Assembly (NCBI RefSeq): GCF_963676685.1
Contig: NC_092346.1
Span: 20,584,001-20,648,000 of the forward strand
Origin: Mytilus edulis
Taxonomy: Eukaryota
Direction: 5' to 3'
Length of the DNA: 64,000 nt
Shown: positions 29,508 through 60,129 of the stretch, in pieces
How the letters are laid out: each line of letters opens with the position of its first letter
Position numbering within the stretch: position 1 is the stretch's first letter
Notes under the pieces: generated by a model
Told to the model about the DNA's origin: nothing
The model's input: only the letters and a program-made list of their open reading frames with translations
Database searches by the model: none
Program-made: the position numbers and the translations under genes

Positions 29508-29653
29508 NNNNNNNNNNNNNNNNNNNNNNNNNNNNNNNNNNNNNNNNNNNNNNNNNNNNNNNNNNNNNNNNNNNNNNNNNNNNNNNNNNNNNNNNNNNNN
29601 NNNNNNNNNNNNNNNNNNNNNNNNNNNNNNNNNNNNNNNNNNNNNNNNNNNNN
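29508..29653. other. Assembly gap (146 N)
   Basis: Run of N. Confidence 1.
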
Positions 29654-40272: not shown

Positions 40273-43200
40273 ATGAAAATCCATGCGTTGGCATTATGTG
40301 CTATTTTGCAACTTCCTTTCTGTTCGAGCCTGTCTGTTGAAATTTTGAAGCCAAACAATACCGGACCAGAAGCTGCACTAATTATCGTTCCTGGAGCGTA
40401 TATTTCAGGATCAGCATATAAACCTTTAGGTAAGTTAACGTATAAGTTTGAATTAGGGGTGATTACTTGAACAAAACAAACCTGTAGTTCAGACTGCAAC
40501 GAGTTGTAATAGAACACAATACTGAGATTTAAAAGCCACAAAAGCATTTTTTGACTTTTGATCTTGGAAATATAGTTCTGATATTGAACTAGATTAATTA
40601 AGGTAACGTGATTTGATAAAGGAAACGTTGATATGATAAAAGTAAAAACGGTACCAAACAATTCTTACATTCCTTTTGGTATTAACCCCCCTCTTTCCCC
40701 CCAACCTTTTTCCTTTTTCAGACTAGGTAACACATAACAGTAACTTACAAACTAGAACTGAGTCAAAACACAACAGAAAACTTTCTTTATAATTCAAGTA
40801 AAATAAGTTATGACCTTTGACATGAGCAAATAAAAAAATCAGTGCCTCTATGCAAATAGAGATCTGGGGTCTAGTGCTACGCATGGTTTTGGATGATCAT
40901 GGATCATAAAGAGGTTTAAAATGAGGAATCGCTGTCCCCCTTTAAACAGTTTGAAAACACAGGCTTTACTGAGTTATCTAATTCGCAAAATTATAATGGC
41001 AAGGTTTGAAATATTTGCCATAAATTGAGAAATGCATTTTCTTTACTGATATATATTCAAGTAGTATATTCTGGTGAGGGATTGAAAATACCTCTTCGGT
41101 ACTATATTATCGAAGCACGTCAAGTTGTTGTTTTGATAAAGTGCTTCATTGATATATTTATATGAATAAGAACTTTTATACATTTGTTCAGGCGGAAGAA
41201 TCATGGAGGATGCCGTTTTAAGCATTTAAGCAAGTTTCCACCAAATAATTTATTGGGCAACGGGCGACAAATGATATAACTTGATTCACTGTTAACATAA
41301 ATACGTTTTCTCAATACTTTAAAACTATCGATTTTATGATTGTCTTTTTTTTTATTTCTTCAGTAAAATCAGATTTTTGAATAACAGTGATTTTCCCCGC
41401 AATTTTAACTTTAATTCTAAGTGAAAACGAGAACTAAAGTTTCAAACCACTTGTACTTATAATAACTCTATGTTATAATTTACTTTCTCCTTTGCGTGCG
41501 ATACATTTATAACTTACTGCTTAGCTATAACTTACATTTTTTTCCACAGCCGAAGTTATTCAGAAGAATAGTAATCTGAAATTATGGGTTGCCTTACTAG
41601 ACGGATTTTTTAATAAACTTGCTAACCCACTCCAACTTCCTATAGTATTTAAAAAAGCTGTTAATGAGTTACAAAAGGCAGGTTATAAAGGGAAGAAAGT
41701 GTTCTTGGCTGGACATAGTCTTGGAGGTATGTACATTATAATATAACACTGTATTTAAAATTATTGATAGCTAAATAAATATTTGATTGGTTTAGAGTAG
41801 TACCCAACGTGACATTGAACATCAGATCCTGACTCTAAACATCTATCTTGCACGACGTAAAGCGAGGTGAATTAAGATATTTTTAGCGTTTAAACGCCTT
41901 CACACAGCGAACTCATTGTCAATAGTATGAGTTTTAAAAGCTTATTCATGATATAAATATTTAGATATTGATAATACCTACTGTATATGTGAAATGAAGA
42001 GTTCGAACCAGGTACGAGGCAGATTTGTGCGTTTTACGTCTTACTTGACTAGGATATTACTTGACTAGGATAGCGACTTTTTCTGCTGAAGGGTGTTTGT
42101 TCTCTACGGGTACAACGGGTTCCTCCACAAGTAAAATCTGACATATTTTGCATAACGTGGCGCTAAAACATCAACAGATAAATCAAACATGTATATTATA
42201 AAATTAAGGCATAGGAAAAAATTGCATGTTCTGAGAAGATTAGTTAAACGTTGAATTGTAGTGCTAAAAAAATCTATCAGACCGAACTTAAAATAGCCAT
42301 ATCCTCTTTTTTATGTTGAATTATCACCAACTATATGTGAAGTTTAATTATAGGTGAAGTTGTAGCCCTTTATGGACAAAAAGCGAACCATATTTTAGAT
42401 GGAGTGTTGTTATTCGCATCTTACATTACCAAGAACAACAAACTAAAAGAGTATCCATTCCCAGTTCTGACCATAAGCGGAGACCTAGATGGATTAACTA
42501 GAATAACAAGGATCGTAGATACATTCGAGTGAGATTAATAGACGCTGTTTGTTTTTTTACTTTCATATACTGTTTAATTAATGTGTAAGTTTTAAATGTC
42601 CCTCTGGTATCTTTCGCCCCTGTTTATAACAGCAAATATAAGCCATGCAATAATAGCCATATAAATGGAAAAAAAGTTAAAATAAAAAAAATAGAAATAA
42701 CATTGTTAATACATTTTAAAAAAAAATTGCTATACATTTTTATGAAAACGACTTACTAGTGATAAGAATCCTGTATGGAACCATGTATAACGTTAACAAG
42801 AAAGAACGTACTTGTTCAGTAAGATCCATTAAACACATTTTATAGCAAAGCGTATCAGTTGTGAAATAAACACGGCAAAAAAATGCGCCATACGGCTGAC
42901 ATTTCAGTAAAAAAAACTATAAAAATAATTGTCATTGAAAATCTGAGATTGTCCATTTAGCGTATTTTTCATGTCATCTTGACTATATTTTCCAATAATG
43001 CAAGGTTTGAAAAGGGCAATATTTTATTTTTTATTTTCAGGGAACTCCAAGAAGACGTAAAAAGCGATCCAGAGCAAATATACAGGACACCTGTAGTGGT
43101 AATGGAGAGCATAAATCATGGACAATTCGCTTCGGGTCCGTTACCCAAACCTGTAACTGACCACGATCTAAATCCAGAGGTATCTCAATCTGTAGCATAT

Positions 43201-45897
43201 AATACCATAGCTAATTACTCGAACGCTTTCATGGTAGTCATCAGAAATGAAACAGATACCAATGTAACGAAAGCCAAAAACAACTTAGAAGACGGTCATA
43301 CTAAAACTGCTACAATGATGCAGGTGAATATAATTTTATTTTTTTGTTTAACTGTTGTTGATCTTGGTTTCCTTTTTCCTAAGCGAATGTTTTTATGTTT
43401 TTTTCGACTAAAGATGGTTATACTTTGTACTTGTGTCTGATAAGGATCTTGCTTTCACATTTTTTGTTGGAATTAAAATTATAGGTTTAGTTCGAATCAA
43501 ATTATTCTTTTTAATATTCACGTTTATACTTCAATCAAATTATTCTGTAAAAATTAATGTTTTAATCTGTTAATACATTTAATTGTATTTTGAACATGCC
43601 ACCGCTTTAGAAGCGCATTAATTATGTTGGTATCATTTTAGCCTCTCTCGAAAGTGAAAGCTCTTGATCAAAATCCGGATTTTACCTCACACTGGACTAA
43701 CACTGCTCAAGAACTCGTTGTCAGTCTGAAAAATATAACAGATGTTGAGGTAATAATTTTTTTTCAGTAGAACTGTTAAAGTAGAAATCAATCACTTTAT
43801 TGTTAGCAGAAGATAAGCCATTTGTCATGATCTAAGTGGATTGTATCCTACAAAAGTATTTGATGTGTACGTAAAATGCATGAACAAAAATACCGACCTC
43901 CAATAATTCAACGAAGGGGGAGTCCATATAAGCTGACGAAATCTCCACTGTATCAATTAAGGGCACGAATGAAAATCGATTGTCTTATTCCTCGCCTGGT
44001 ACAGACAGTAGTTTATAGTTATATTGACAAAATTGGGTGAGCTATCAGAACCTACAGATTTGTCAAACGTGGCAGTTAGTGGGATCTGGGAGCACAAACT
44101 GTGTAAGCATATCACAGAGACTTAAAACATACAAAGACAATCTGACATAACCGTCATAAATGAATAAATGAATAAATGAATGGTTGAGCAAGTAGGTTTC
44201 CATAATAAATTCTGAATAGGACAACGTCAGACGAATAATAATTATGCATACACGCAGAACGTTATAAATAGTTATCAAAGGTACCAGGCTTAAAATTTAA
44301 TACACCAGACGCGCGTTTCGTCTACATAAGACTCACCAATGTCACTATCAAAATAGTTATACATCCAAACAAGTACAAAGTTGAACAGCATTGAGGACCC
44401 ACAATTCCAAAAAGTTGTGCCAAATACAGCTTAGGTAATATATGCCTGGGATAAGAAAACCTTATTTATTTTGAAAAATTCATACCTTTGTAAACAGGAA
44501 ATTTATAAAAATGACCATATAATTGATATTCATGTCAACACCATCTTGGCTTTCAAATATTCGGCTTTGAGCAATCCTGGTAAAGATCAACCCAAAAAAG
44601 TGCTTCAGAAGCATAAAATTTATAACGTGTTGTGTTTTTTTTTTCTTCATTAAAAGACTTTTTTCACTATGATTTATATGTTATACACTTATACACTTTT
44701 ATCAAAACTACAAACGTGAAAAGCGTTTTTGTTCAAATTGAATTAACCTCTAATTTATTAGTTTATCAACTACGAAGACGAATCACTGGACATTTTACCA
44801 AAGGAATTACCTGTCTTACTTCCGTCAGATAATGTAAAAATTGAAAGTTTAACAACTTTATGGATGCAACCAAATCCTCTAGATTCAACTACATCTCCTC
44901 TGAGTCCATTACAACTCAAAGCAACAATGAAAAGTCAAGAGGCTGTCAAAACGATTTTACCCTCCAGCCAATTCGGAATATCGGCATCCTGTAAAGAAGT
45001 CAACCAGGTATTGTCAGACCTATTTTTTCCCAACGAAATTATGTTATTATCAAATATGAACGGTATCTTTATTAACTATGCAAATGATTCTTAGAATAAA
45101 TGTTTGGTAATTAAAAGGAAAGGACAAATTGAAAACAACGGATTTGGTAAAATATCTGTTTGGAAACTGCAATTTGTAATTAAACTATCGCCGAACACAA
45201 AGTTCAGACAACAGAAATAATAGAAATAATTTATGACTGACAGCTAAATCGTCGGCAATACACAGGAAAAGGTACATCATGAACTTGAAAGAGTATTCTG
45301 CTCCGCGTTAGTCACCCGTCTTATTGTTCCGTGATCAAATTCAGGAACCTTTATTAAAGCGGGAATGTTTAAATCGACAGGTAAGGCAATTCTGTTTGTT
45401 TTTGGTATGGCCTCTTTTAATTGAGTTCTCTGCTTTAAATATTTTTCAAGCAAGGTTGTTATTTTTAATGATCCATCTGTAAAAAAACAGATTCAAGGAT
45501 AGTATTTAAAACATTGTATATATGAATGTAACATAGATTGTGACGTATACTTTATTAAAGACCCAATATGTTTTAGAATGCTTATGAACTAGCCTTTGCC
45601 AAATCGTCACCGATCGCAAAGGAAAGGTACACATCAAGAGGAAGACAAATAGTATTCAATGAGGACGTCAGTGTTTCATCACAATTTCAATGGATTAAGT
45701 CACAATTAGATCTCAACTATAATCAAACAGGTCTCTTTGTAACAGCTACCAGATTCCATACTGATATGAGTCAGCCAACGAAAAGCTATTCTGGACAAAG
45801 TGATTGTACTTTGATATCGCCATTCAGAGCAATGGAATGGATTTATATCGATTCTCTAAAATATACCAAGTCACAAATAGAATCTAATACTACATAA
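40273..45897 (+). CDS. Secreted alpha/beta-hydrolase-fold protein (Abhydrolase_5-like), 488 aa, 7 exons, intact catalytic triad
   Basis: Exons 40273-40429, 41550-41726, 42354-42528, 43041-43323, 43642-43749, 44762-45007, 45577-45897; all GT-AG, 1467 nt open. Signal peptide MKIHALALCAILQLPFCSS, oxyanion loop IVPGAYI, nucleophile GHSLGG, acid GDLDG, histidine NHGQF. AATAAA at 45961. Confidence 0.9.
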
Positions 45898-47835: not shown

Positions 47836-50800
47836 ATGGATACAATATTTAAAATAGTTTTGTTTTCTTTGTGCATTCAATCATGTTTGAGTATAAAAGT
47901 GACTGTTATGGCTCCAAACAAAACTGGATTGGAAGCTGCAATAGTGATAGTTCCGGATTCGTCTATATCAGGAGCTGCGTATAAGCCTCTAGGTAAGAGG
48001 ACTACACAATCTAAGAATGTAATGGTTTTTCAATAATTTAAATTAACTTATGGGAATAGGGTTATATACCTTTTAACTGAATTTTGGAAAAAACATATTG
48101 AATAATATTAGAAAGATTTACTAAATACTGCATTATTTTACGTATAAAGTCGAATTACCCGTATTATACTGGTATCAAAAATGGAATTGCAAATCGAAAA
48201 GAAAGGCAACTGAAAAATTGAAATGAATTTTATCGAAAGATAAATTTAATTAAAATCGCACATCTTCGTGAATACGTTTGACCGAGGCAAAAAAATAATT
48301 AATGTATAAGAAATACAGGTCACTAAACAATGAATTCGTAAACACATTGTGCACGTATATTAACTGAGTAGCAAAATCTTGGAGTTATGGCCAGTTGCTT
48401 CAGTATGTGTGTTCAATCATAGGTTAAATATGAAAGAGTTATCAAAAGTCAACAAGAATGTTAATATAAAATTCTACAAAAAATACTTAAATATTTTTTT
48501 TTAATTACCACGTTAACTTTGAATGACTTTTTACACAAAATTTAATTTTTATCTGTTTTTGTAAAATTTTACATCGTGGGTGACATCTTTATTAAATGAA
48601 CTACCTTGTGTCTGACAACTCGTATTTCTGTACTCCCGAAAGAGTACAATGACAATAGGCGAGGAGCGGCTTACAAAAATCTGGTTTATCCCAACTCATA
48701 ACATGAATGTACAAGTCATGATATCTATACCGTGTTGTACAATTCATGATATCTATACCGTGTTTTACACGTCATGGTATCTATACCGTGTTGTACACGT
48801 CATGATATCTACACCGTGTTGTACACGACATGATATCTATACCGTGTTGTACATGTCATGATATCTATACCGTGTTGTACAAGTCATGATACCAATACCA
48901 GGCCTGGGGCCATTACATTGCAATGTAATGCATTACATTACAATTACTTTGTGATTCTTCCATTACAATTACTTTGTGATTCTTCCATTACAATTACAAT
49001 TACATTTTTTCTCACATGTAATGCATTACATTACAATTACTTTGCCTGTGTAATGCATTACATTACACATTACTTTTTCAATATAAAAACTAAAAACATT
49101 TCAAAAAACAGATTTTTATAAGAATTGATAAATTTGATGTAATTTGGTCGAATGATTTTAAATAAGTCAGAATATTGTCAGTATTTCAAAATAATGAGTA
49201 AAATTTGAAAATGTGCAAATTCAGTGGAAATTTTTCTAAACGGTCTATTGAATTTGATTGATTGATAGATGTTTAATGCCACTTTTAACACATTGTGCTA
49301 TTTCGTGGCGGTCAGTTTCAATTGGTTGAAGGAAGTCGGACTTCTCTTCGTGTGGAAAACTAAAAATCCTAGTCAATTAAGAACTAATTTGAATATTATT
49401 ACATTATCTCACTGGTTAAACTGTAAGGCACAACAAAATGTATACAAATCAATAAACAATGCATGGATGAGAGAATCATATATATTTATATATTATATAA
49501 TTCAATGTTGTGATGTCATTTTATAAAGTGTATAGCATAAATAGAATACAAACAAAGCTGGATGGAATATACAAGCATAGTTATTAAGAAACAGTATAGA
49601 TAAATGCATTCATGTTGGTTTATCTTTTTTAAATATAATATATAATATCTTATTAGTATAAAATCTAAACAATAAATTGGATTGTTAATGAATAACACAA
49701 ATACAATAAACACTACAAACATGTCACATGGATAACACAATCCATGTTTTCTTCTCCTATTTATCATCAGATTTTCATTTAAATAATTATATTTAGACAC
49801 CGACAAAAAAAACCTGTTTTTTTATATTTATTCATACTAGAAAAAGGAAGGCGAAAAGCCGGTTGCAAATTGACAACGCCATTGCAAAAAAAAAAGAAGA
49901 AAAAAATACGATCTAGAGGCAAATAACAGTATACAAAATATAGCATAGAAAATTTAGCACCGAAAAAAAATCACACCGGAAGGTTAAGGTGGTACCTAAC
50001 ACTACATGGAGATAACTCTGTAAAGTCAGCTAAACGTTTTAATTACGTTGTGTTGTAAAAGGAATATTAATTGTTATCAAAGGTACCAGGATTATAATTT
50101 AGTACGCCAGACGCGCGTTTCGTCTACATAAGACTCATCAGTGACGCTCATATCAAAATATTTATAAAGCCAAACAAGTACAAAGTTGAAGAGCATTGAG
50201 GATCCAAAATTCCAAAAAGTTGTGCCAAATACGGCTAAGGTAATCAACTTCTCAATGATCAAAATTGGTGTTTGTCAAATTGCTATATGACCAGTGTAAT
50301 GTTTCTGGCAAAACGGTTGGTTAAAATTTTTTAAAATTTTTATATTTTTGTTAACGTGTCAAAGTAAATACTTTGACAAACTTTTGTGAAAAATAAACGA
50401 GCCAAATTAATTTTAGTGAAAGTGTTGGGTACCACCTGAAGCAAATTATGTTTCACATGAGGTACCGGTCGTGTTGCTCATGCAGGTACACACTCGGTGA
50501 TAAATGTTATTCGATGACGTCTCTTTCGAGGAAAAAGGACGGAATTGCACTTCAAAAAAATTAACTTATCCGTCGTCATTTTCGAAACAGATATTACATA
50601 ACAGTTGATCAAAGTATGGCGTCCGTAAAATTTACGATGACATGACTTCAACCTCACCTCCTTTAGTAAATAGCTTCATTGTAAGCAGCAATTGTTTATA
50701 ATGGAAATCATGATAGGAATGCAAGCTGTGGAATATAGTATCAACTCGGATATATATTATCTAAATGCAGACGCTGCTTAAATGTTATTAAATAGAAATG

Positions 50801-53800
50801 GTAAGTTCACAATTGGGAAGCTAAAACTCATTTTTTGGCGTAATGACTATTCTCGATCGATCTTCATCGTCAATTTTAAGATGTTCGTCAAGATACGTAG
50901 CAGACATAACTGTAACTGGTGTATCATTGCATTTCAAGTTCGGTAATACATAAGCGTTAAACATTGTCACCAAACTTATTTCGGAATGGGACACATCTGA
51001 AAAGCGGAACGTAAGGTTTAAGCAGAAGGAAATAGCTTCTTTTTGATTTTCCTCAACACTGCATGTGTGAAATGTTACTTTTTTTAGTAAGGAACTAGTC
51101 GGTAAGAAGATGACCACAGCGGGTTCCGATGGAAATGCTGATTATTTGTTGAAAAACACGTCATAAAACGTCACTTAAGTGTTTTGTATCTATATTTGTA
51201 TCTACGATGACCAATGTTTGAATGAAATAATGCAAGATTAATTATTTTATCTATCTGTTAGTGTGTAAACTGAAATATATTGTGTAAAGGGTATAAAAGT
51301 CAAATATAGTTTATATTATAGCTATTGCTATAACTAAATGTTATTTAAAAAAAATCCTATTATTATTCATTGCGCTCAGTATTGTTTGGTGGAGGAAGCC
51401 AGAGAGAACCACCGACATTCGGTTGGAAAACTGACAATCATAGTTAATTCTCTAACATATCATATATTTGAAATACGTGCAAATATGTAAGCTCTGTCAA
51501 CAATTCCATGCTAAATTCATTTGGGTAGGTAAGTTTACTACTATTATCAAATTGTAGTAACAAGTAACACATATACAGTTCTGAAATAACTTGTAGATGC
51601 ATAGTGTTAATTAACAAAATAAAAAAGGAAAGTCATAGTAAAAAGTAAAATCACAAAAAAACTGAATTCCGAGGAAAATTTCAAACGGAAAGTCCCTAAA
51701 AAATGACAATATTAAATACTCACACACATCAAACGAAAGGATAGCAACTATTATATTCCTGACTTGGTACAGTAATTTAGTAATATCGCGCCCTATACAA
51801 GACTTATTATTGATACGTTCTTGTTTAGTCTTAGTAATTTAACTTAGCTTTTAATACATATCATATGGATGATGTTTCAGCTAACGCAATACAGATCCGC
51901 AGCGCTCTCAGCTTATGGGTTGCGATTTTAGAGACGAAACCAGGTTCATTAGCATTCCCTTTTGAATTCAACTATGCATGTAACGAGTTAGTGGATAAAG
52001 GTTTCCGTGGAGATAAAGTATTTCTAGCAGGCCATGGTGATGGAGGTAGAACACATTTTTATGCTCTTTCACTTTTAATCTATCTGATGTTCTCTTTCAG
52101 CAAAAGTATTACAGAGCAGAAGTACTATGAGATTATGGGTTGCGGTTTTAGAGAGCACACCAACTTCACTTTTATTCCCTATTAAATTCAACGGTGCTTG
52201 TAAGCAGTTGCTGGATGCTGGCTTTGAAGGCGATAAAGTCTTTCTAGCTGGTCACGGCTTAGGAGGTAGACTCAAATTATGGCATGATGTTTTCATATCC
52301 TTTTGATATATATTTAATCTTTAGTTTTACTTTTGTGATAAAGATTCTAGATAAGATTATCTGATATTTCTTCAAAACCAATTTTACTTAAATCTTATCA
52401 TGCATGTTCAGAATTCAAAATGATGAACCTTTGTGATATACATTCGGATTTAAACATTGTGCCTTCCTTTTCTGCTTCTCATTTCATTCACAATGACTAG
52501 ATTGCACAAGAAATCCATTTCCATAGTTAGTTTATGTACAATAAATTGCTCTATATTTTCATATTTCTAGAAGTCCATTACTAAGAAAAGTTTGCAAACG
52601 AAAAAGAACGTTTCCGGAGAACTCAATTGCAACTGTGAATACACTCTGATCTTTGTTGCTTTGTATAAGTCTCCGTTCTTTTCCTAGTAGTGGACTTCAC
52701 ATTTTCTTTTAACAAGAACTAGATTTGCATTTAAGTTTAATAGTAATGTAATTATATCTTTTGTAACTTCAAAGAAACGAAAACAAAAACCTCAAAGGGT
52801 ACAATTCAAGCTATCTGAACGCTTTGTAATGAAATATTATTATTGTTTATGCATATTTTGTTTGAAATCATTTTATCCTGCAATTACCCAATAAATTAAG
52901 ACCTACACACTATTATTGCTTTGTTTGAACAGTGAACACCTATTTCATTTCCCAATATCCTGCTTCTGTTAGAGACGAACGGTAATATTATAATACTGTA
53001 AATGTTATAGATCAGGGGTCATTAAGGGCTGTATTAAAAAAAATCCCAGTTCATGACAAAATAAAAGACAATATTTGCAATGCTTTAATGTTAAATTGTA
53101 GGATAAAAATAAAAGAGCTTGGTTACATGGTAACAGTATATGTAATCGCTACGATAAAACAGATGAAAGGTTCAATAAAAAAGAGGAGGATACACCAAAT
53201 GTCAATGACAATTCATATGTCAAAAATACCATGACAAAAAAAAAAAAACAACAAAAAAACGACGAAAAGACAAACAAATATCTAAGGAACACGAACTCCA
53301 TATAAAACAGAGGTGATTTTAGGCGTTCTGTAAGACAAAGTAGCTGTGTTATACATGTAACACCCGTCGTGCTGCTCGTGTAATGTGTAAATCGTTTTAT
53401 AAATCTCATTCGGTGTTGTCCCAATTGTGGAAAGAAGGCATCTGCGACAATTGGAACATACTCATGGTAATCTGTGAAACATATCAAAGTGAATTAACGG
53501 TCAACCCAATCATGATATGGTTTGTAAAACTTGATATTTTATATCTTTATCGACAATGTGCGTATGTTTAGTGTGTAAATTGTTTTGTGAATACATTAAT
53601 AAAATTGCAGCTTAGAACACATAAGCTATTTGAAGTAACGTCAATACAATAAACGGTTTTTGGGTTTTGCAAATAGGTTTCGTTTTAAATGTTTAGCATA
53701 CATTTGATACCTTTTCATGATAAACGAAGGTTAAAAGAGAAAATTTATTTCATAGGTCATAGGGCATCTAGTTACGGCCATTCAATATTCCATAAGAATA

Positions 53801-56800
53801 GACTTGATGGAGTGTTGTTGTTTTCATCGTTCCTCAGCGGAAGTTATCGGCTGAACAATTATCCATACCCAGTTCTTACAATTAGTGGGGACTTAGACGG
53901 AATAACGAGAGTAACCAGAATGGTCGATGCATTCGAGTGAGTGATTTTTTGTTATTATAATGATAGTAGTTAGGTAAAATGAAGTTCCTTACATATTCGA
54001 TTAACACGATCAATACATTGTTGTTCTGTGAAATAACAGCATCTAACGTGCGATACTATAAAAATTTGACCTCAGATGAATTTGGCTATGCCTTTAATGT
54101 ATCTTGATCTTTTAACGCCTTACGTTTCTACGCATTTATACATCACTGACTTTCAATTGTTTAAGCTTGAGAATACGGAAGAAGGTAAATATATATAAAC
54201 TACGAAATTTGTTTTACATGCACACGTATAAAAATTGCGGTTTTCATCCAACACAATCATAGGTTTGAACGTAGTTTTCAATTTAGACTCGTTTATATTT
54301 TTTCGTTTGGACTTGTATCATATTTTCCATCCGGTTTATATGATCCGTTCATCCTACATTGACTCTTAAAATTCAAGAGTCTATCTAAAAATGAGGGTAC
54401 TTTTTATATGGCCTTCCAAATACCGTTTCGATCTCTAACATCACTGAAGAGACATTTATTGTCGAAATCCGGATCTGGTGTACTAAAAAGATATTGACAT
54501 CGTGGCCACAAGTTGATTTTTTTTCTGTTTAGTATTAAATTTATATTAAGATCCATTTTGTTACATCTTGTGATCAATTTTATTTGGCAATCGCCAATGG
54601 CAGTCAGCAGGGTTAAAGAACATCAGTTGTTCGACCTGTTAGTCAAATGCGTTTTGTTTAAATAGACGCTCATATCAAAATAGTTATAAAGCCAAACAAT
54701 ACAAAGTTGAAGAGCATAGATTATCCAAAATTCCAAAAAGTTGTGCCAAATACGGCTAAGGTAATCTATAAACACTACCATTTTTTTAATTTATAGGCAG
54801 TGAAAACCGAAATATTTTGACAATGATATATCAAATTTACGTTGGAGTATATGAATCATGTGTTAACAAAATAGTAATTCATTTATTTTCATATGAATAT
54901 AAAACTTTTGAGCATTTTATTGTAATAACCAAAAGAATTTTTTTCATGTTTTTGTGTGTTTTGGGAAGTAAAAAATAATAACTGATATTTATACGAAAAT
55001 TACAGTTTTATAAACTCGGCTTAATTTATAGTTTGTTAGTGCATTGACCGAAAATTAGTAAAATAGTACAGTAAAAAAAAGTAAAAATAATGTAGAAATT
55101 TGAAGAATCGTGATATTTGTATCTAATCTCGAACGATACAATTTAGATTTTCTTTTTCACTTCTTGCCTTTTCATTGATTTTATTACATTGCCTACTCAC
55201 TAACTTACTAATTTTGCACGATTTCATCAAACATTAAAATTGAGAATGGAAATGGGGAATGTGTCAAAGAGACAACAACCCGACCAAATAAAAAACAACA
55301 GCAGAGGGTCACCAACAGGTCTTCAATGTAGCGAGAAATTCCCGCACCCGGAGGCGTCCTTCAGCTGGCCCCTAAACAAATATATACTAGTCCAGTGATA
55401 ATGAACGCCATACTAATTTCCAAATTGTACACAAGAAACTAAAATTAAAATAATACAAACTAACAAAGGCCAGAGGCTCCTGACTTGGGACAGGCGCAAA
55501 AATGCGGCGGGGTTAAACATGTTTGTGAGATCTCAACCCTCCCCCTATACCTCTAACCAATGTAGTAAAGTAAACGCATAACAATACGCACATTAAAATT
55601 CAGTTCAAGAGAAATCCGAGTCTGATGTCAGAAGATGTAACCAAAGAAAATAAACAAAATGACAATAATACATAAATAACAACAGACTACTAGCAGTTAA
55701 CTGACATGCCAGCTCCAGACTTCAATTAAACTGACTGAAAGATTATGATTTCATCATATGAACATCAGGCACAATCCTTCCCGTTAGGGGTTTAGTATCA
55801 TACCATCATAACATATATGAGAAGAACATAACCCGTGTCATGCCAACAACTGTTTTTAGAATAAATGTGTTTAGTTCCGATGCAAAGACCTTATCAGTGA
55901 CTCAATATTAACGCCAAAATATGCAATCTTTAATGACTTGACAACAGTATCGTAATTATATCCCTTCTTAATAAGTCTATTCAAAGGTTTTGTAAGTTTC
56001 TGAGGTGAATACTAACACCTTTGTGCTTTATAAAGAATATTACCATAAAAAATTGGATGTGAAATACCTGAACGTATTAGAAGTCTGCATGTTGAGCTAT
56101 ATTTACGAATGATGTCTTTATACCGATGATAAAATTTAGTAAATGTTTTGACTAGTTTGTGATATCGAAAACCCTGGTGTAATAATTTTTCAGTAATACA
56201 TAAATTTCTCTCGTTAAAATCGAAAACATTGTTACATTAACGAGCGAATCGTACAAGTTGAGATATATAAACACCGTAAGATGGTGACAAGGGAACGTCA
56301 CCATCTAAAAACGGATAATTAACGATAGGAAATGAAAAATCATCCCTTTTATCATAAATTTTAGTATTCAGCTTTCCATTAGTGATATAGATATCAAGAT
56401 CGAGAAAAGGGCAGTGGTCATTGTTAGTATTAGCTTTATTTAAAGTAAGTTCAACAGGATAAATTTCATTAATATACATACTGAAGTCGTCATTATTGAG
56501 AGCCAAAATATCATCCAAATATCTAAAAGTATTATTAAATTTGTTATTCAGATGTTGTTTCGATGGGTCTTTGCTTATTTTTGTCATTGTCTCCATTTAA
56601 ATTAAATTTCAGAGAGCTGGAAGCAGATTTGATACTAGCTCCAACACAAAAATTCACCACACCTGTAATTGTAATGGAAGGTATGAACTATGGACAGTTT
56701 GCATCTGGTACACTTCCACCAGCTGTAGCGGGTTATGACTTGAAACCAGAAATTTCCCAAAAAGATGCATATGATGCTATAGCTAACTACACGAATGCAT

Positions 56801-58895
56801 TTATGCTGTATGTACGGGACACCAATGTATCAGAAGCAACATCTATGCTCGAAGAGGGATATTCTAAAACGCAGTCGATACTTCAAGTGAGTTTGAATCA
56901 TCACCTCATTTCCAGAATTTTTAAATCATTATGATTGTTAACTTGAGTGTTTGTAACTTCGTCCAAAATTGTTTGTTAGCTCTAAGGGGAATATTAACTT
57001 TATTCCACAGAAATGAAATCGGCTAATTTTCCTTTTTTTATATTTGAAAAAATACATAAACTATACAGTTTTGACACACACCAATAATTAAAATTTACAT
57101 TTTAACTCCTGAGTAGCATTGTATTTTCTAAAAATCAAAATTTGCTTTTTAAGCCAATTACCAGTTGCATCGATATAGGCTTTCTCTGACCGCTAATTTG
57201 TTTTGTATAAATGAAGGTACAGATATGACAAACACGAAATGCATATTTAGTATAAAAATACACTTATTTTACAGGAATGAAATACAAAAGGCAATGTCAA
57301 GATTTGAATACCTAAAACTTATGATAAAAATGTATTATCAAAATCAGTCTAGAACCAAAAACTTATGAATATAAGCGACTAAATGATTGTTTTCAATAAA
57401 AAAATCTCATGGAGATGTATTTTTGTATAATTTCAGCCCCTTTCACAAGTGAAAGCTCTTGATGATAATGAAGAATATGTCTCCCATTGGACAAACACTG
57501 CTCAGCAACTTATAGTCAATCTTCTGGATACCTCACTAGTTGAGGTAAAAGATAACACATTGTTATTATCATATAGATATTGTATTAATATTAACATCAA
57601 AAAGCATTTAACACTTATACCGGAGTACCTGAGATCACCCCAGTTTTTGTTGCCATAAGCGAACTTGAAAGGGTTCAATTTTATCTCGATTGACTATATG
57701 ATTATCACAAAAGAGATCATCGAACTCTATATAGGTCTTTAATAAATAACGGCAAATAGAGAATAAATTATAGTATTACTAATCGCCGTATTTGAATATC
57801 AAAAATAAGACAACTTGTGACCGAACGCCGCTATGGATTAAACTTGTGCATCAAAAATAAGACAACGCGTGACCGAACGACGCATGGATTAAACGAGTGC
57901 GCAGCACAAGTTTAATCCATAGCGGCGTTCGGTCACAAGTTGTCTTATTTTTGATATTCAAATACGGCGATTAGTTATACTTTTTATTACATTGGCTAAT
58001 GGCTTTTTTTTATGAAATTAATGTAGAAAATGTAAGGAACTATATATTTTTCCTGCGCATTCACAATTTGTTTTGATCCGACGTTATCGACGTCTTGACA
58101 ACGTCTATTGTTGTATATGACGTCAGAGAGTGAAATAACCACGTTTATTTCACATGTGAAATTATCGGTTTTTATCTAACTTGGAAATCAATGTAATTTA
58201 TTGCAACCAATGTAATAAATGTTTATTGGCCCACCAGATGTAAACTTGAAGGATTATCATAATTGGGAGATTTGAATCATAATACATGTTTTTTAAAAGA
58301 TCTAGTAGAAATGACTTTACCAATGGGAAAGATATATTGAATTAAATCAACTACACAGAATCCCAATATATACACTTGATAAAAACAAAAACAAAACCCC
58401 CAACCAATTTATTGATGTTCTTCCACAAAATTCAAAGCGACCTCCTTAGAAGTGTTACTACCCGCATTTTCGTTAATCTATTGGAAGGATTTCGCGTTTG
58501 GATAGAATATTTAAACTGTGAGATTTTGCAATATAAGTTTTTTTTCCCTAATTTTGCTCACTTATTTAATTTATTTGAACATATCTCAATTGTTTATTTC
58601 AGTTTGATAATACCGAAGAAACACCATCACAGCCTAAATCATTTCGATTTCGCAAACCGCATCAGTCAGATATGTTAAAAATTAACAGCTCTACTGAAGT
58701 ATATTTTCCAAACACAGATGGTACTAAGATTCCTCAAAGTCCCCTACAACTTAAAGCAACTATGACAAATCAAAGAGCTATTAAAACACTCTTGCCATCT
58801 GCACCTTTTGGCGCACCTGCTACCTGTCAAGATATCAATCAGGTACTTGATTTATACGCTGATTATTTACCTCATAATTATTAACTGACATCAAC

Positions 58896-58938
<43 letters not shown>

Positions 58939-60129
58939 AAATAGTTATGTTTAGATTGTTTAATATCTGCAAGCAATCGAGATAATATGAATGCATGCCT
59001 AAAAACTTAAGTTGACTGAAATGGAACATTTTCACACCTAAAAACAGAAGTATTATTAAGTTTAAATTGTCAATGACTTGCAGCGCTTTGAAAATTCTCA
59101 GTGGCACTCATACCACATCTTCCTATATCTATTTTAGCATGCGTATATCACTAGCACTAGGGGTAGTTTCTTTTTTTTTTGGTCATAATTTATCTTTTTC
59201 ACTACCACTTGCGGTGTTGGCGGACTGGTTCTCTGTTTACACTCGCACAAGAGCCAATCAACGATGTGGACTTTTTAACTATATGAATTTCATTTAGATA
59301 TTATTGTATTCTGAAGTTTCTTTCACACATTTGGTCTCGAGTTTGTATAATGTAGGAAAATCAAGAGTCAGGTGTTGTGCGCCATGAAATCAGTACCATC
59401 CATTTTTCTTAGTCGTATGAGACGCATCTGTTTTCCTTGAATATTATAAACTTACCATTAATACCAGGCTAACAATTGTGTACGCCAAACACATGTTTCG
59501 TCTACACAGGACTAATCAGTGACACCAGAATCAAAACTTTTATAAAGCTAAATCAAGTACGAAGTTGAAGAGTATCAAAACCCCAAAAATTCCATACTGT
59601 TGTATGGATTCGAATTTTATAAAGAGAACATAAACTTAACATTAGCAACAGATTTGGAAATCTTTATTTTGGAAAACAATTATAACAAATTATGGAACAT
59701 AAGTGTTAACCTGATGGCGTATTCACTGATTTTATTTTGTTGTTAGGTTGCGGTCAAATGACCGACACTTAACATCTTCATTTATTCGTGATACTAATTT
59801 GTTTTTCTTAAATATTGTAGGATGCCTTTACACTAGCCTTTTCAAAATCTTCAGCCACAGCAAAGGCTAGATACCAGTCTAAAGGAAGGCCGATAAAATT
59901 TCTTCAAGACGTCAATGTTACATCGAAGAACAATTGGAACCAATATGGAGATCTAAAACTTAACTACAACATAACTGGTCTGTTTGTTCAAGCATCACGT
60001 TATATATCTACAAAACCATCAGGGAGAGATGATGACTGTACCTTGTTATCGCCCTTTAGAGCAATGGAATGGATATACGTAGATTCTTTGAAAAATACAA
60101 AAGAACAAACTTATACAAATAATACATGA
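47836..60129 (+). CDS. Secreted alpha/beta-hydrolase-fold paralog, predicted catalytically inactive, 477 aa per isoform, duplicated exon 2
   Basis: Exons 47836-47992, [51881-52045 or 52101-52265], 53756-53936, 56613-56886, 57437-57544, 58603-58842, 59821-60129. Same intron positions and phases as the upstream paralog, ORF fully open. GHSLGG is replaced by GHGDGG or GHGLGG, and NHGQF by NYGQF. Confidence 0.88.
48708..48890. repeat. Minisatellite, 28-bp unit, about 6.5 copies
   Basis: CATGATATCTATACCGTGTTGTACAAGT in tandem, followed by an (ATTAC)-rich element end starting at about 48900. Confidence 0.92.
49988..50436. mobile_element. Kolobok-type MITE carrying a nested retrozyme fragment (about 50073-50246)
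   Basis: TIR GGTGGTACCTAACACT / AGTGTTGGGTACCACC with flanks TTAA and TGAA. Confidence 0.75.
50103..50149 (-). ncRNA. Type I hammerhead ribozyme, intact core
   Basis: Minus strand reads GAGCGUCA-CUGAUGA-GUC uuaugua GAC-GAAA-CGCGCG-UC/UGGCGUA. Confidence 0.88.
50600..50990 (-). pseudogene. Decayed Penelope-like reverse transcriptase fragment
   Basis: Reads SATYLDEHLKIDDEDR...F*FPIVNLPFLFNNI*AASAF..YISELILYSTACISYHDF, homologous to the RT at 56237-56590. Confidence 0.75.
54438..54481 (+). ncRNA. Type I hammerhead ribozyme of a second sequence family
   Basis: ACATCA-CTGAAGA-GACA tttat TGTC-GAAA-TCCGGA-TC/TGGTGT: stem I ACAUCA/UGGUGU, stem II GACA/UGUC, palindromic stem III AUCCGGAU. Confidence 0.85.
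55232..56590 (-). mobile_element. 5'-truncated Penelope-like retroelement (Naiad-type): RT C-terminal half plus 3' UTR
   Basis: Reads FRYLDD...PFLDL...YDKRDDFSFPIVNYPFLDGDVPLSPSYGVYISQLVRFAR and continues in frame through two premature stops to ..SLHRN* at 55871. No GIY-YIG domain follows the RT. About 640-nt UTR whose terminal motif recurs at about 60371 and 63760-63812. Confidence 0.88.
55754..55820 (-). promoter_or_regulatory. Form-2 SECIS element (selenocysteine insertion sequence) in the retroelement 3' UTR
   Basis: Minus strand reads UCAUAU auguu AUGAU GGUAUGAUACU AAA CCC cuaac GGG a AGGAUUGUGCC UGAU guuc AUAUGA: helix I, AUGA/GA quartet, 11-bp helix II with 10 of 11 pairs, unpaired AAA and an apical mini-stem. 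Confidence 0.82.
57772..58218. mobile_element. Palindromic non-autonomous element (78-bp inverted arms plus an adjacent 12-bp IR module)
   Basis: Arms 57772-57849 and 57904-57981 are near-perfect reverse complements, and the spacer is a diverged copy of part of the arm. TTATTACATTGG (57984) and CCAATGTAATAA (58207-58218) form a second inverted pair. Confidence 0.7.
58897..58935. repeat. (AAT)n microsatellite, about 13 units
   Basis: Direct reading. Confidence 0.95.

What the first reader, a model, noticed from the sequence alone, without database searches (positions are those of the whole stretch)
51881..52265. Duplicated active-site exon forming a likely mutually exclusive cassette in the pseudoenzyme
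Seen: two homologous 165-nt exons (51881-52045 and 52101-52265), both open, both phase 1-1 with AG/GT sites, separated by only 55 nt. They encode ANAIQIRSALSLWVAILETKPGSLAFPFEFNYACNELVDKGFRGDKVFLAGHGDG and AKVLQSRSTMRLWVAVLESTPTSLLFPIKFNGACKQLLDAGFEGDKVFLAGHGLG. They are strongly diverged in DNA yet keep length, frame and a Cys, which suggests both are maintained by selection. The upstream paralog has a single exon 2. Inference: the very short intron enforces either/or splicing, swapping the strand-helix-elbow module around the former catalytic pocket and giving two binding variants of a secreted non-catalytic protein.
Basis: partly seen in the sequence, partly recalled or inferred. Interest (0 to 1): 0.82.

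Follow-up and report, generated by a model that had tools for sequence, protein, structure and literature searches.

The report
Swappable exon pair in mussel pseudo-hydrolase
A blue-mussel gene for a secreted, catalytically dead alpha/beta-hydrolase carries two tandem copies of its "active-site" exon that are used one at a time; this is real but is an ordinary kind of alternative splicing, and public gene annotation already lists both isoforms.

Summary
Exons 51881-52045 (2a) and 52101-52265 (2b) are both 165 nt, phase 1-1, AG/GT-flanked and 55 nt apart, with 61% protein and 71% DNA identity.

The window is Mytilus edulis. With 2a the gene gives XP_071161907.1 and with 2b XP_071161906.1, each 477 aa and each an exact match. 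Equal-length isoform pairs that differ only in this exon are also annotated in M. galloprovincialis (two pipelines) and M. trossulus. In M. coruscus a gene model uses 2a, and a 1527-nt spliced contig uses 2b. No record includes both exons or neither.

Between M. edulis and M. coruscus, both exons change at the protein-wide rate (6/54 each, against 42/399). Both keep every family-conserved residue. The protein lacks the nucleophile Ser (Gly105) and the triad His (Tyr194), so "pseudoenzyme" is supported.

That the 55-nt intron enforces exclusivity by steric interference is plausible: the likely branch points lie 33-42 nt from the 2a donor. Distinct binding properties of the two isoforms are inference only.

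This is a new member of a known kind and is already in RefSeq as isoforms. The scan noted a similar duplicated-exon pair in another gene (ACE) of this genome.

The parts
47836..47992 (+). Exon 1 (coding part). It runs from the start codon and encodes the signal-peptide-like N-terminus and the first strand and loop of the hydrolase domain. It ends in phase 1 at a gtaag donor.
   Evidence: exact match to residues 1-52 of XP_071161906.1/07.1
51848..51855 (+). cttttaat motif 26-33 nt upstream of the exon 2a acceptor. It is a candidate branch site and is conserved in both duplication units.
   Evidence: sequence only; branch point not mapped
51881..52045 (+). Exon 2a, 165 nt, phase 1-1. It encodes residues 53-107 of the isoform with the GHGDG elbow.
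   Evidence: identical to XP_071161907.1 (P0057)
52046..52100 (+). The 55-nt intron between 2a and 2b, with a gtagaa donor and a ttcag acceptor. Candidate branch adenines are at 52078 (cttttaat, +33 from the donor), 52082 (+37) and 52087 (ctgat, +42).
   Evidence: length is 55 nt here and 58 nt in one Logan contig variant
52101..52265 (+). Exon 2b, 165 nt, phase 1-1. It encodes residues 53-107 of the isoform with the GHGLG elbow.
   Evidence: identical to XP_071161906.1 (P0059)
53756..53936 (+). Exon 3. It encodes the helix after the elbow, two strands and the GDLDG segment that holds the invariant Asp155.
56613..56886 (+). Exon 4. It contains Tyr194 at the position of the family's catalytic His.
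57437..57544 (+). Exon 5
58603..58842 (+). Exon 6
59821..60129 (+). Exon 7 (coding part), including the stop codon

Best explanation
A 220-bp tandem duplication inside a Mytilus gene for a secreted, catalytically dead alpha/beta-hydrolase homolog (Abhydrolase_5 domain plus a C-terminal domain of unknown function) produced two copies of exon 2. This exon encodes the end of helix A, strand beta4, the loop after it, helix B, strand beta5 and the former nucleophile elbow. SHOWN: both copies are intact. Each occurs alone in spliced products or annotated isoforms of several Mytilus species, and no product has both or neither. Both copies predate the split of M. coruscus and M. californianus from the M. 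edulis complex, and both evolve at the same protein rate as the rest of the gene. INFERRED: joint inclusion would stay in frame and so would not be removed by nonsense-mediated decay. It is therefore most likely prevented by steric interference. The intervening intron is a 55-nt relic of the duplication, and its likely branch points lie only 33-42 nt from the 2a donor, too close for U1 and U2 to assemble on the same intron. The 2a donor can then only join exon 3, and the 2b acceptor can only join exon 1. Both alternative exons have the same weak gtaga donor, which fits regulated choice. The swap changes 21 of 54 residues. These include the residue next to the dead nucleophile (Asp or Leu), the loop after beta4, and two surface helices, with a net charge change of about +3. 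This probably gives two surface or pocket variants of a binding protein.
For: The exon anatomy and exact translations are.

The window's gene model equals XP_071161907.1 with 2a and XP_071161906.1 with 2b.

Isoform pairs of 477 aa differing only in residues 54-106 exist in M. edulis, M. galloprovincialis (RefSeq, and the independent VDI66352/VDI66353 models) and M. trossulus. The M. galloprovincialis annotation used PASA transcript alignments and a refinement round for alternatively spliced exons (PMC7653742).

In M. coruscus, gene model P0187 uses 2a. A 1527-nt Logan contig encoding 453 aa (P0188), which must be spliced, uses 2b. M. californianus XP_052106401.1 uses 2b.

No 532-aa (both exons) or 422-aa (neither exon) form appears among the cluster members or the hits.

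Protein divergence between M. edulis and M. coruscus is 6/54 in 2a, 6/54 in 2b and 42/399 in the rest. Both exons keep all family-conserved positions: Q57, S60, L64, W65, V66, P79, G93, F100, A102, G103, H104 and G107.

Exon 2a protein is invariant in six haplotype variants, whereas the read-through intron carries 4 changes and an indel.

AlphaFold2 models of both isoforms are equally confident (pLDDT 91.9 and 91.5) with the same topology. The domain is a canonical alpha/beta hydrolase (Z 22.8 to 9eh6).

For the steric mechanism: Ser105 is Gly and His194 is Tyr, against Ser in 60/68 and His in 63/68 family members. The intron is 55 nt while the gene's other introns are 550-3888 nt. A steric threshold of about 50 nt between 5' splice site and branch point is reported in human (PMC5740500; PMC7969005), and a minimal intron of about 40 nt in C. 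elegans (PMC4165533).
Against: No RNA reads could be laid, so junction counts, tissue pattern and the true absence of 2a-2b joining are not measured.

RefSeq isoforms can partly rest on protein alignments from earlier annotations, so the records from different species are not fully independent. Direct transcript evidence seen here exists only for 2b, in M. coruscus.

Pairwise dN/dS between 2a and 2b is 0.49 (Fisher p = 0.06). On its own this is compatible with one constrained copy and one neutral copy.

The minimal spliceable intron in Mytilus is unknown. Introns of about 55 nt are spliced in flies and nematodes, so 55 nt may not be prohibitive.

Steric exclusion does not explain why double skipping is absent. 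Double skipping would also stay in frame.
Confidence: 0.7

Rival explanations
1. Only one exon matters. One copy (2b, the only one seen here in a spliced contig, or else 2a) is the working exon. The other is a slowly decaying or rarely and noisily spliced duplicate that annotation pipelines pick up and propagate between species.
For: The only transcript-derived sequence seen here uses 2b. M. californianus has only a 2b isoform annotated. A pairwise dN/dS of 0.49 fits one neutral and one constrained lineage. A follow-up on another duplicated-exon pair in this genome (ACE) saw only one copy in RNA (unchecked note).
Against: 2a is intact with canonical splice sites in every species where it was seen. 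It diverges between M. edulis and M. coruscus no faster than the rest of the protein (6/54 against 42/399). It keeps all 12 family-conserved residues. It is invariant in six haplotype variants while the adjacent intron varies. Isoforms with 2a are present in five independent annotation sets, including one based on PASA.
Confidence: 0.15
2. The exons are truly mutually exclusive, but the short intron does not enforce this. Exclusivity comes from competing RNA structures, from trans-acting repressors or activators, or from simple competition between the two weak donors and the two acceptors.
For: Both exons have identical weak gtaga donors. The 2b acceptor has the better pyrimidine tract. Introns of 50-60 nt are spliceable in several invertebrates (own knowledge; PMC4165533 gives about 40 nt as the minimum in C. 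elegans). Most human mutually exclusive clusters are not explained by steric interference (PMC5740500).
Against: No convincing docking/selector-type complementarity was found in 51000-53800; there were only AT-rich matches of the kind chance gives. The intron has stayed at 55-58 nt in a gene whose other introns are 0.5-3.9 kb. The conserved candidate branch motif is only 33 nt from the 2a donor.
Confidence: 0.25
3. Both exons are constitutively included, giving a protein with a tandemly repeated segment.
For: Joint inclusion would stay in frame, giving 532 aa with no internal stop.
Against: None of the 14 cluster members and none of the 123 homolog hits has a 532-aa form or two matches to the exon profile. 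All full-length hits show one matched stretch. A duplicated beta4-helix-beta5 unit would not fit the compact alpha/beta-hydrolase core seen in the models.
Confidence: 0.02

Closest known systems
Mutually exclusive exons born by tandem exon duplication and kept apart by steric interference. Examples are alpha-tropomyosin exons 2/3, human OGDH exons 4a/4b, and C. elegans egl-15, let-2 and gly-5 clusters.
   Same: There are two adjacent homologous exons of identical length and phase. Their length is divisible by three, so nonsense-mediated decay cannot police joint inclusion. The intervening intron is very short, or the branch point lies close to the upstream donor. The intron has remained short over evolutionary time (PMC5740500, PMC4165533, PMC7969005).
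   Different: The branch point is not mapped here and the species-specific size threshold is unknown. At 55 nt, the intron is longer than the 14-30 nt introns of the C. elegans cases. The gene is an uncharacterised pseudoenzyme rather than a channel, motor or metabolic enzyme.
Uncharacterised eukaryotic/cyanobacterial Abhydrolase_5 (PF12695) family with a C-terminal domain of about 240 aa ('Alpha/beta hydrolase fold-5 domain-containing protein' in UniProt). Its nearest solved folds are AroC (9eh6), chlorophyllase (8fjd) and PETase/cutinases.
   Same: The domain order and length are the same (about 480 aa). The GH-x-x-GG elbow, the invariant Asp155, and the C-terminal Cys and SPFRAMEWIY-type motifs are shared.
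   Different: Gly replaces the nucleophile Ser and Tyr replaces the catalytic His. Two other Mytilus paralogs share these changes, but the upstream neighbour does not. This is also the only family member seen here with a duplicated exon 2.
Non-catalytic alpha/beta-hydrolase-fold binding proteins such as neuroligins, gliotactin and the thyroglobulin ChEL domain (own knowledge).
   Same: They have an alpha/beta-hydrolase fold with a lost nucleophile. They are secreted or extracellular, and alternative splicing modulates their binding surfaces.
   Different: They belong to a different subfamily (cholinesterase-like against small Abhydrolase_5). In neuroligins, splicing inserts short segments rather than swapping the elbow-containing core module. 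No ligand is known here.

Membership tests
Mutually exclusive exon pair from tandem exon duplication | Adjacent exons of one gene that are homologous to each other | tested here: met
   61% protein and 71% DNA identity, E 1e-20. Homology extends into the flanking intron.
Mutually exclusive exon pair from tandem exon duplication | Same length, same splice phase, canonical splice sites on both | tested here: met
   Both are 165 nt, phase 1-1, with AG acceptors and GT donors.
Mutually exclusive exon pair from tandem exon duplication | Each exon is found alone in spliced products | tested here: met
   2a-only and 2b-only 477-aa isoforms are recorded in three species. The spliced Logan contig P0188 has 2b only, and the M. 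coruscus model P0187 has 2a only. Apart from P0188, the evidence consists of annotation records.
Mutually exclusive exon pair from tandem exon duplication | Joint inclusion and joint skipping are absent or rare in RNA | not testable with these tools
The only indirect evidence is that no 532-aa or 422-aa record exists.
Steric-interference subclass of mutually exclusive exons | Distance from the upstream exon's 5' splice site to the branch point is below the minimum for spliceosome assembly | tested here: inconclusive
   The intron is 55 nt, with candidate branch adenines at +33, +37 and +42. This is below the human threshold of about 50 nt. The branch point is unmapped and the Mytilus threshold is unknown.
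Alpha/beta-hydrolase fold, Pfam Abhydrolase_5 (PF12695) | Profile match at or above the gathering score, and the canonical fold | tested here: met
   The 2b isoform scores 29.0 bits (cut-off 27). The 2a isoform scores 25.1 bits, just below it. Catalytic-type relatives score 40-58 bits. The model aligns to 9eh6 at Z 22.8, rmsd 2.5 A over 193 residues.
Active serine hydrolase | Ser-Asp-His catalytic triad | tested here: not met
   Gly105 stands in place of Ser (Ser in 60/68 relatives). Tyr194 stands in place of His (His in 63/68). Asp155 is kept (68/68). The protein is therefore a pseudoenzyme by sequence; no activity assay was done.

The most novel reading that the evidence does not exclude
The exon swap is a regulated switch between two ligand or partner specificities of a secreted dead hydrolase. 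It changes the residue beside the former nucleophile (Asp or Leu), the pocket-side loop after beta4 and two surface helices. Selection has held the 55-nt intron short for tens of millions of years precisely to keep the two versions exclusive. This would be a case of diversification through mutually exclusive exons acting on a pseudoenzyme's relic active site.
Probability: 0.3. Interest if true: 0.45.

Novelty: new member of a known kind. Interest (0 to 1): 0.27.

Why it matters
This is a clean invertebrate example of how a small tandem duplication creates a mutually exclusive exon pair. The 220-bp unit automatically leaves an intron too short, or nearly so, to be spliced. It also shows that a catalytically dead hydrolase is still being diversified at its former active site, which argues that the pocket has a maintained, non-catalytic role. 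In practical terms the finding adds little: RefSeq already lists both isoforms, the family has no known function, and this kind of splicing is well known.

Tried and rejected

**Partial transcripts containing 2a.** A word search with the 2a genomic ORF returned only the genomic ORF cluster.

**Docking/selector RNA structure.** The inverted-repeat scan of 51000-53800 gave only AT-rich matches of chance quality.

**Dating the duplication with a tree of the 54-aa segment.** The tree was unresolved within the dead-paralog clade, and the long-branch paralogs landed inside 2a. I do not trust that placement.

**A second exon 2 in the paralogs.** None was found within 1.5 kb either side.

**Pfam on single exons.** Nothing useful came back.

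**PDB sequence search with the paralog's exon 4.** No hit.

**ESM Atlas on the C-terminal domain.** No usable hit.

**Literature.** No paper mentions these accessions. None describes mutually exclusive exons in this Mytilus gene. No minimal-intron figure for molluscs was found.

**Pairwise dN/dS (0.49, p = 0.06).** I rejected this as decisive evidence, because it cannot separate two constrained copies from one constrained and one neutral copy.

Full report
**What is in the sequence**

Each is 165 nt. Each is preceded by a ...ttcag acceptor and followed by a gtaga donor, and each begins and ends in phase 1. They are separated by 55 nt.

They share 33 of 54 residues and 115 of 162 bases. The DNA alignment shows that the similarity continues about 35 nt into the upstream intron, including a shared cttttaat motif, and through the first bases of the downstream intron. 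The repeat offset is 220 nt. The 55-nt intron is therefore simply what a 220-bp tandem duplication left between the copies.

**The gene**

Mapping public proteins onto the window gives an eight-exon layout:

| Exon | Coordinates |
|---|---|
| e1 | 47836-47992 |
| 2a | 51881-52045 |
| 2b | 52101-52265 |
| e3 | 53756-53936 |
| e4 | 56613-56886 |
| e5 | 57437-57544 |
| e6 | 58603-58842 |
| e7 | 59821-60129 |

All exons have canonical splice sites. The other introns are 550-3888 nt.

Exons were searched by reference, and whole-protein work used public protein ids. The only joining was an in-script equality check. It showed that the model with 2a is letter-for-letter XP_071161907.1 and the model with 2b is XP_071161906.1, both from Mytilus edulis. 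The window is therefore M. edulis, on a 1.37-Gb assembly.

**Are the exons used one at a time?**

A profile of the exon against 1.84 billion proteins and the cluster look-ups gave the key result. Equal-length 477-aa isoform pairs exist for:
- M. edulis
- M. galloprovincialis, in RefSeq XP_076100079/80 and in the independent models VDI66352/3
- M. trossulus, XP_063426639/40

Aligned, the members of each pair differ only in residues 54-106, carrying either 2a or 2b.

The M. galloprovincialis annotation was built from PASA transcript alignments, with a refinement round for alternatively spliced exons (PMC7653742).

Two deeper Mytilus branches add evidence. The M. coruscus gene model uses 2a, while a 1527-nt Logan contig encoding 453 aa uses 2b. 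That contig is necessarily spliced, and outside exon 2 it is identical to the model. M. californianus RefSeq uses 2b.

No record has both exons (532 aa) or neither (422 aa). Every full-length hit matched the exon profile once.

**Are both exons maintained?**

Pairwise dN/dS between 2a and 2b is 0.49 (dN 0.31, dS 0.62; Fisher p = 0.06). This alone cannot exclude one neutral copy. Cross-species data are more telling:
- Between M. edulis and M. coruscus, 2a differs at 6/54 positions and 2b at 6/54. The rest of the protein differs at 42/399, so the rate is the same.
- Both copies keep all twelve positions of the exon that are conserved in 60% or more of a 68-member family alignment, including W65, G93, F100, H104 and G107.
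- Among six haplotype variants of the genomic ORF that runs through 2a into the intron, the 2a part never changes. The 18 intron codons carry four changes and a 3-nt indel, giving an intron of 55 or 58 nt.
- The divergence between the copies (39% of residues) is several times the divergence across the genus (11%). The duplication is therefore much older than the Mytilus radiation.

**What the protein is**

Pfam finds Abhydrolase_5. Relatives of about 480 aa occur in molluscs, brachiopods, echinoderms, hemichordates, protists and cyanobacteria, and all are uncharacterised.

AlphaFold2 models of both isoforms are confident (pLDDT 91.9 and 91.5) and have the same topology. Residues 19-236 align to small esterases: AroC 9eh6 at Z 22.8, chlorophyllase at Z 19.8, and PETases at about Z 18. 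The C-terminal half was not identified.

In the family alignment, the nucleophile column is Ser in 60/68 members, the His column is His in 63/68, and Asp155 is invariant. This gene has Gly105 and Tyr194. The upstream neighbour (40273-45897, XP_071161905.1) keeps Ser and His. Two further paralogs just beyond the window are also dead. "Pseudoenzyme" is therefore supported by sequence. Secretion is inferred from the N-terminal hydrophobic helix.

**What the swap changes**

Exon 2 encodes residues 53-107. These cover the end of helix 46-59, strand 63-70, the loop at 71-79, helix 80-91, strand 99-104 and the elbow.

The 21 differences fall in four places:
- The first helix: 7 differences.
- The loop after the strand: 4 differences. 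Here the 2a model is less confident, with block pLDDT 74 against 93 in 2b.
- The second helix and the turn after it: 8 differences.
- The residue after the former nucleophile. It is Asp in 2a, as in the other dead paralogs, and Leu in 2b, as in 88% of the family.

Net charge shifts from -1 to +2. That this alters binding is inference.

**How exclusivity is probably enforced**

Both joint inclusion and joint skipping stay in frame, so nonsense-mediated decay cannot be the filter.

The intervening intron is 55 nt. Its candidate branch adenines lie 33-42 nt from the 2a donor, the best being the conserved cttttaat motif at +33.

A 5' splice site to branch point distance under about 50 nt is the accepted steric limit in humans (PMC5740500; PMC7969005). 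Introns under about 40 nt are not removed in C. elegans (PMC4165533). The intron here has stayed at 55-58 nt while its neighbours are kilobases long.

I found no convincing competing RNA structure. I rate steric interference at about 0.6. It is untested, and the Mytilus size limit is unknown.

**Verdict**

The either/or reading is supported. The mechanism and the functional consequence are plausible inferences.

This is a standard kind of alternative splicing in a gene of unknown function. Both isoforms are already public as X1/X2 records, though no paper describes them. Interest is low to moderate.

Noticed in passing
window 40273-45897 (+): The upstream paralog (identical to M. edulis XP_071161905.1) keeps the GHSLG nucleophile and the NHGQF histidine and has a single exon 2. 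It is the only catalytic-type copy in a local cluster of four.
   Followed up: partly
L004 (G000:C3:20653817-20656966) and L005 (G000:C3:20732028-20735177): Two more paralogs lie 7 kb and 85 kb beyond the window end. Both are catalytically dead (GHGNG and AHGDG elbows). Each has one exon 2 only, within 1.5 kb either side.
   Followed up: partly
proteins P0106, P0109, P0112: The nucleophile Ser is replaced by Gly in unrelated members of the family as well: a chiton, the snail Gigantopelta, and one unnamed Logan protein. In these the His is kept, which suggests recurrent loss of catalysis in this family.
   Followed up: no
window 52046-52100; proteins P0001, P0070-P0073: Logan genomic contigs show intron-length polymorphism (55 or 58 nt) and several substitutions in the 2a-2b intron, while exon 2a is invariant at the protein level.
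   Followed up: partly
   Followed up: no
protein P0187 (M. coruscus CAC5381906.1): This 525-aa gene model replaces the conserved C-terminal end of the family with an unrelated charged, coiled-coil-like tail. It is probably a fused or mis-joined gene model.
   Followed up: no
window 52570-52590 / 52678-52698: A 21-nt inverted repeat, 90% complementary with an 87-nt loop, lies in the intron between exon 2b and exon 3. Its relevance to splicing is unknown.
   Followed up: no
window 29508-29653: A run of 146 N (assembly gap or masked stretch). It was left untouched.
   Followed up: no
protein P0005: A 92-aa Logan ORF from an unnamed source resembles exon 2 of the catalytic-type paralog, including its longer loop, but carries GHGLGG. 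This suggests another dead copy in some related genome.
   Followed up: no
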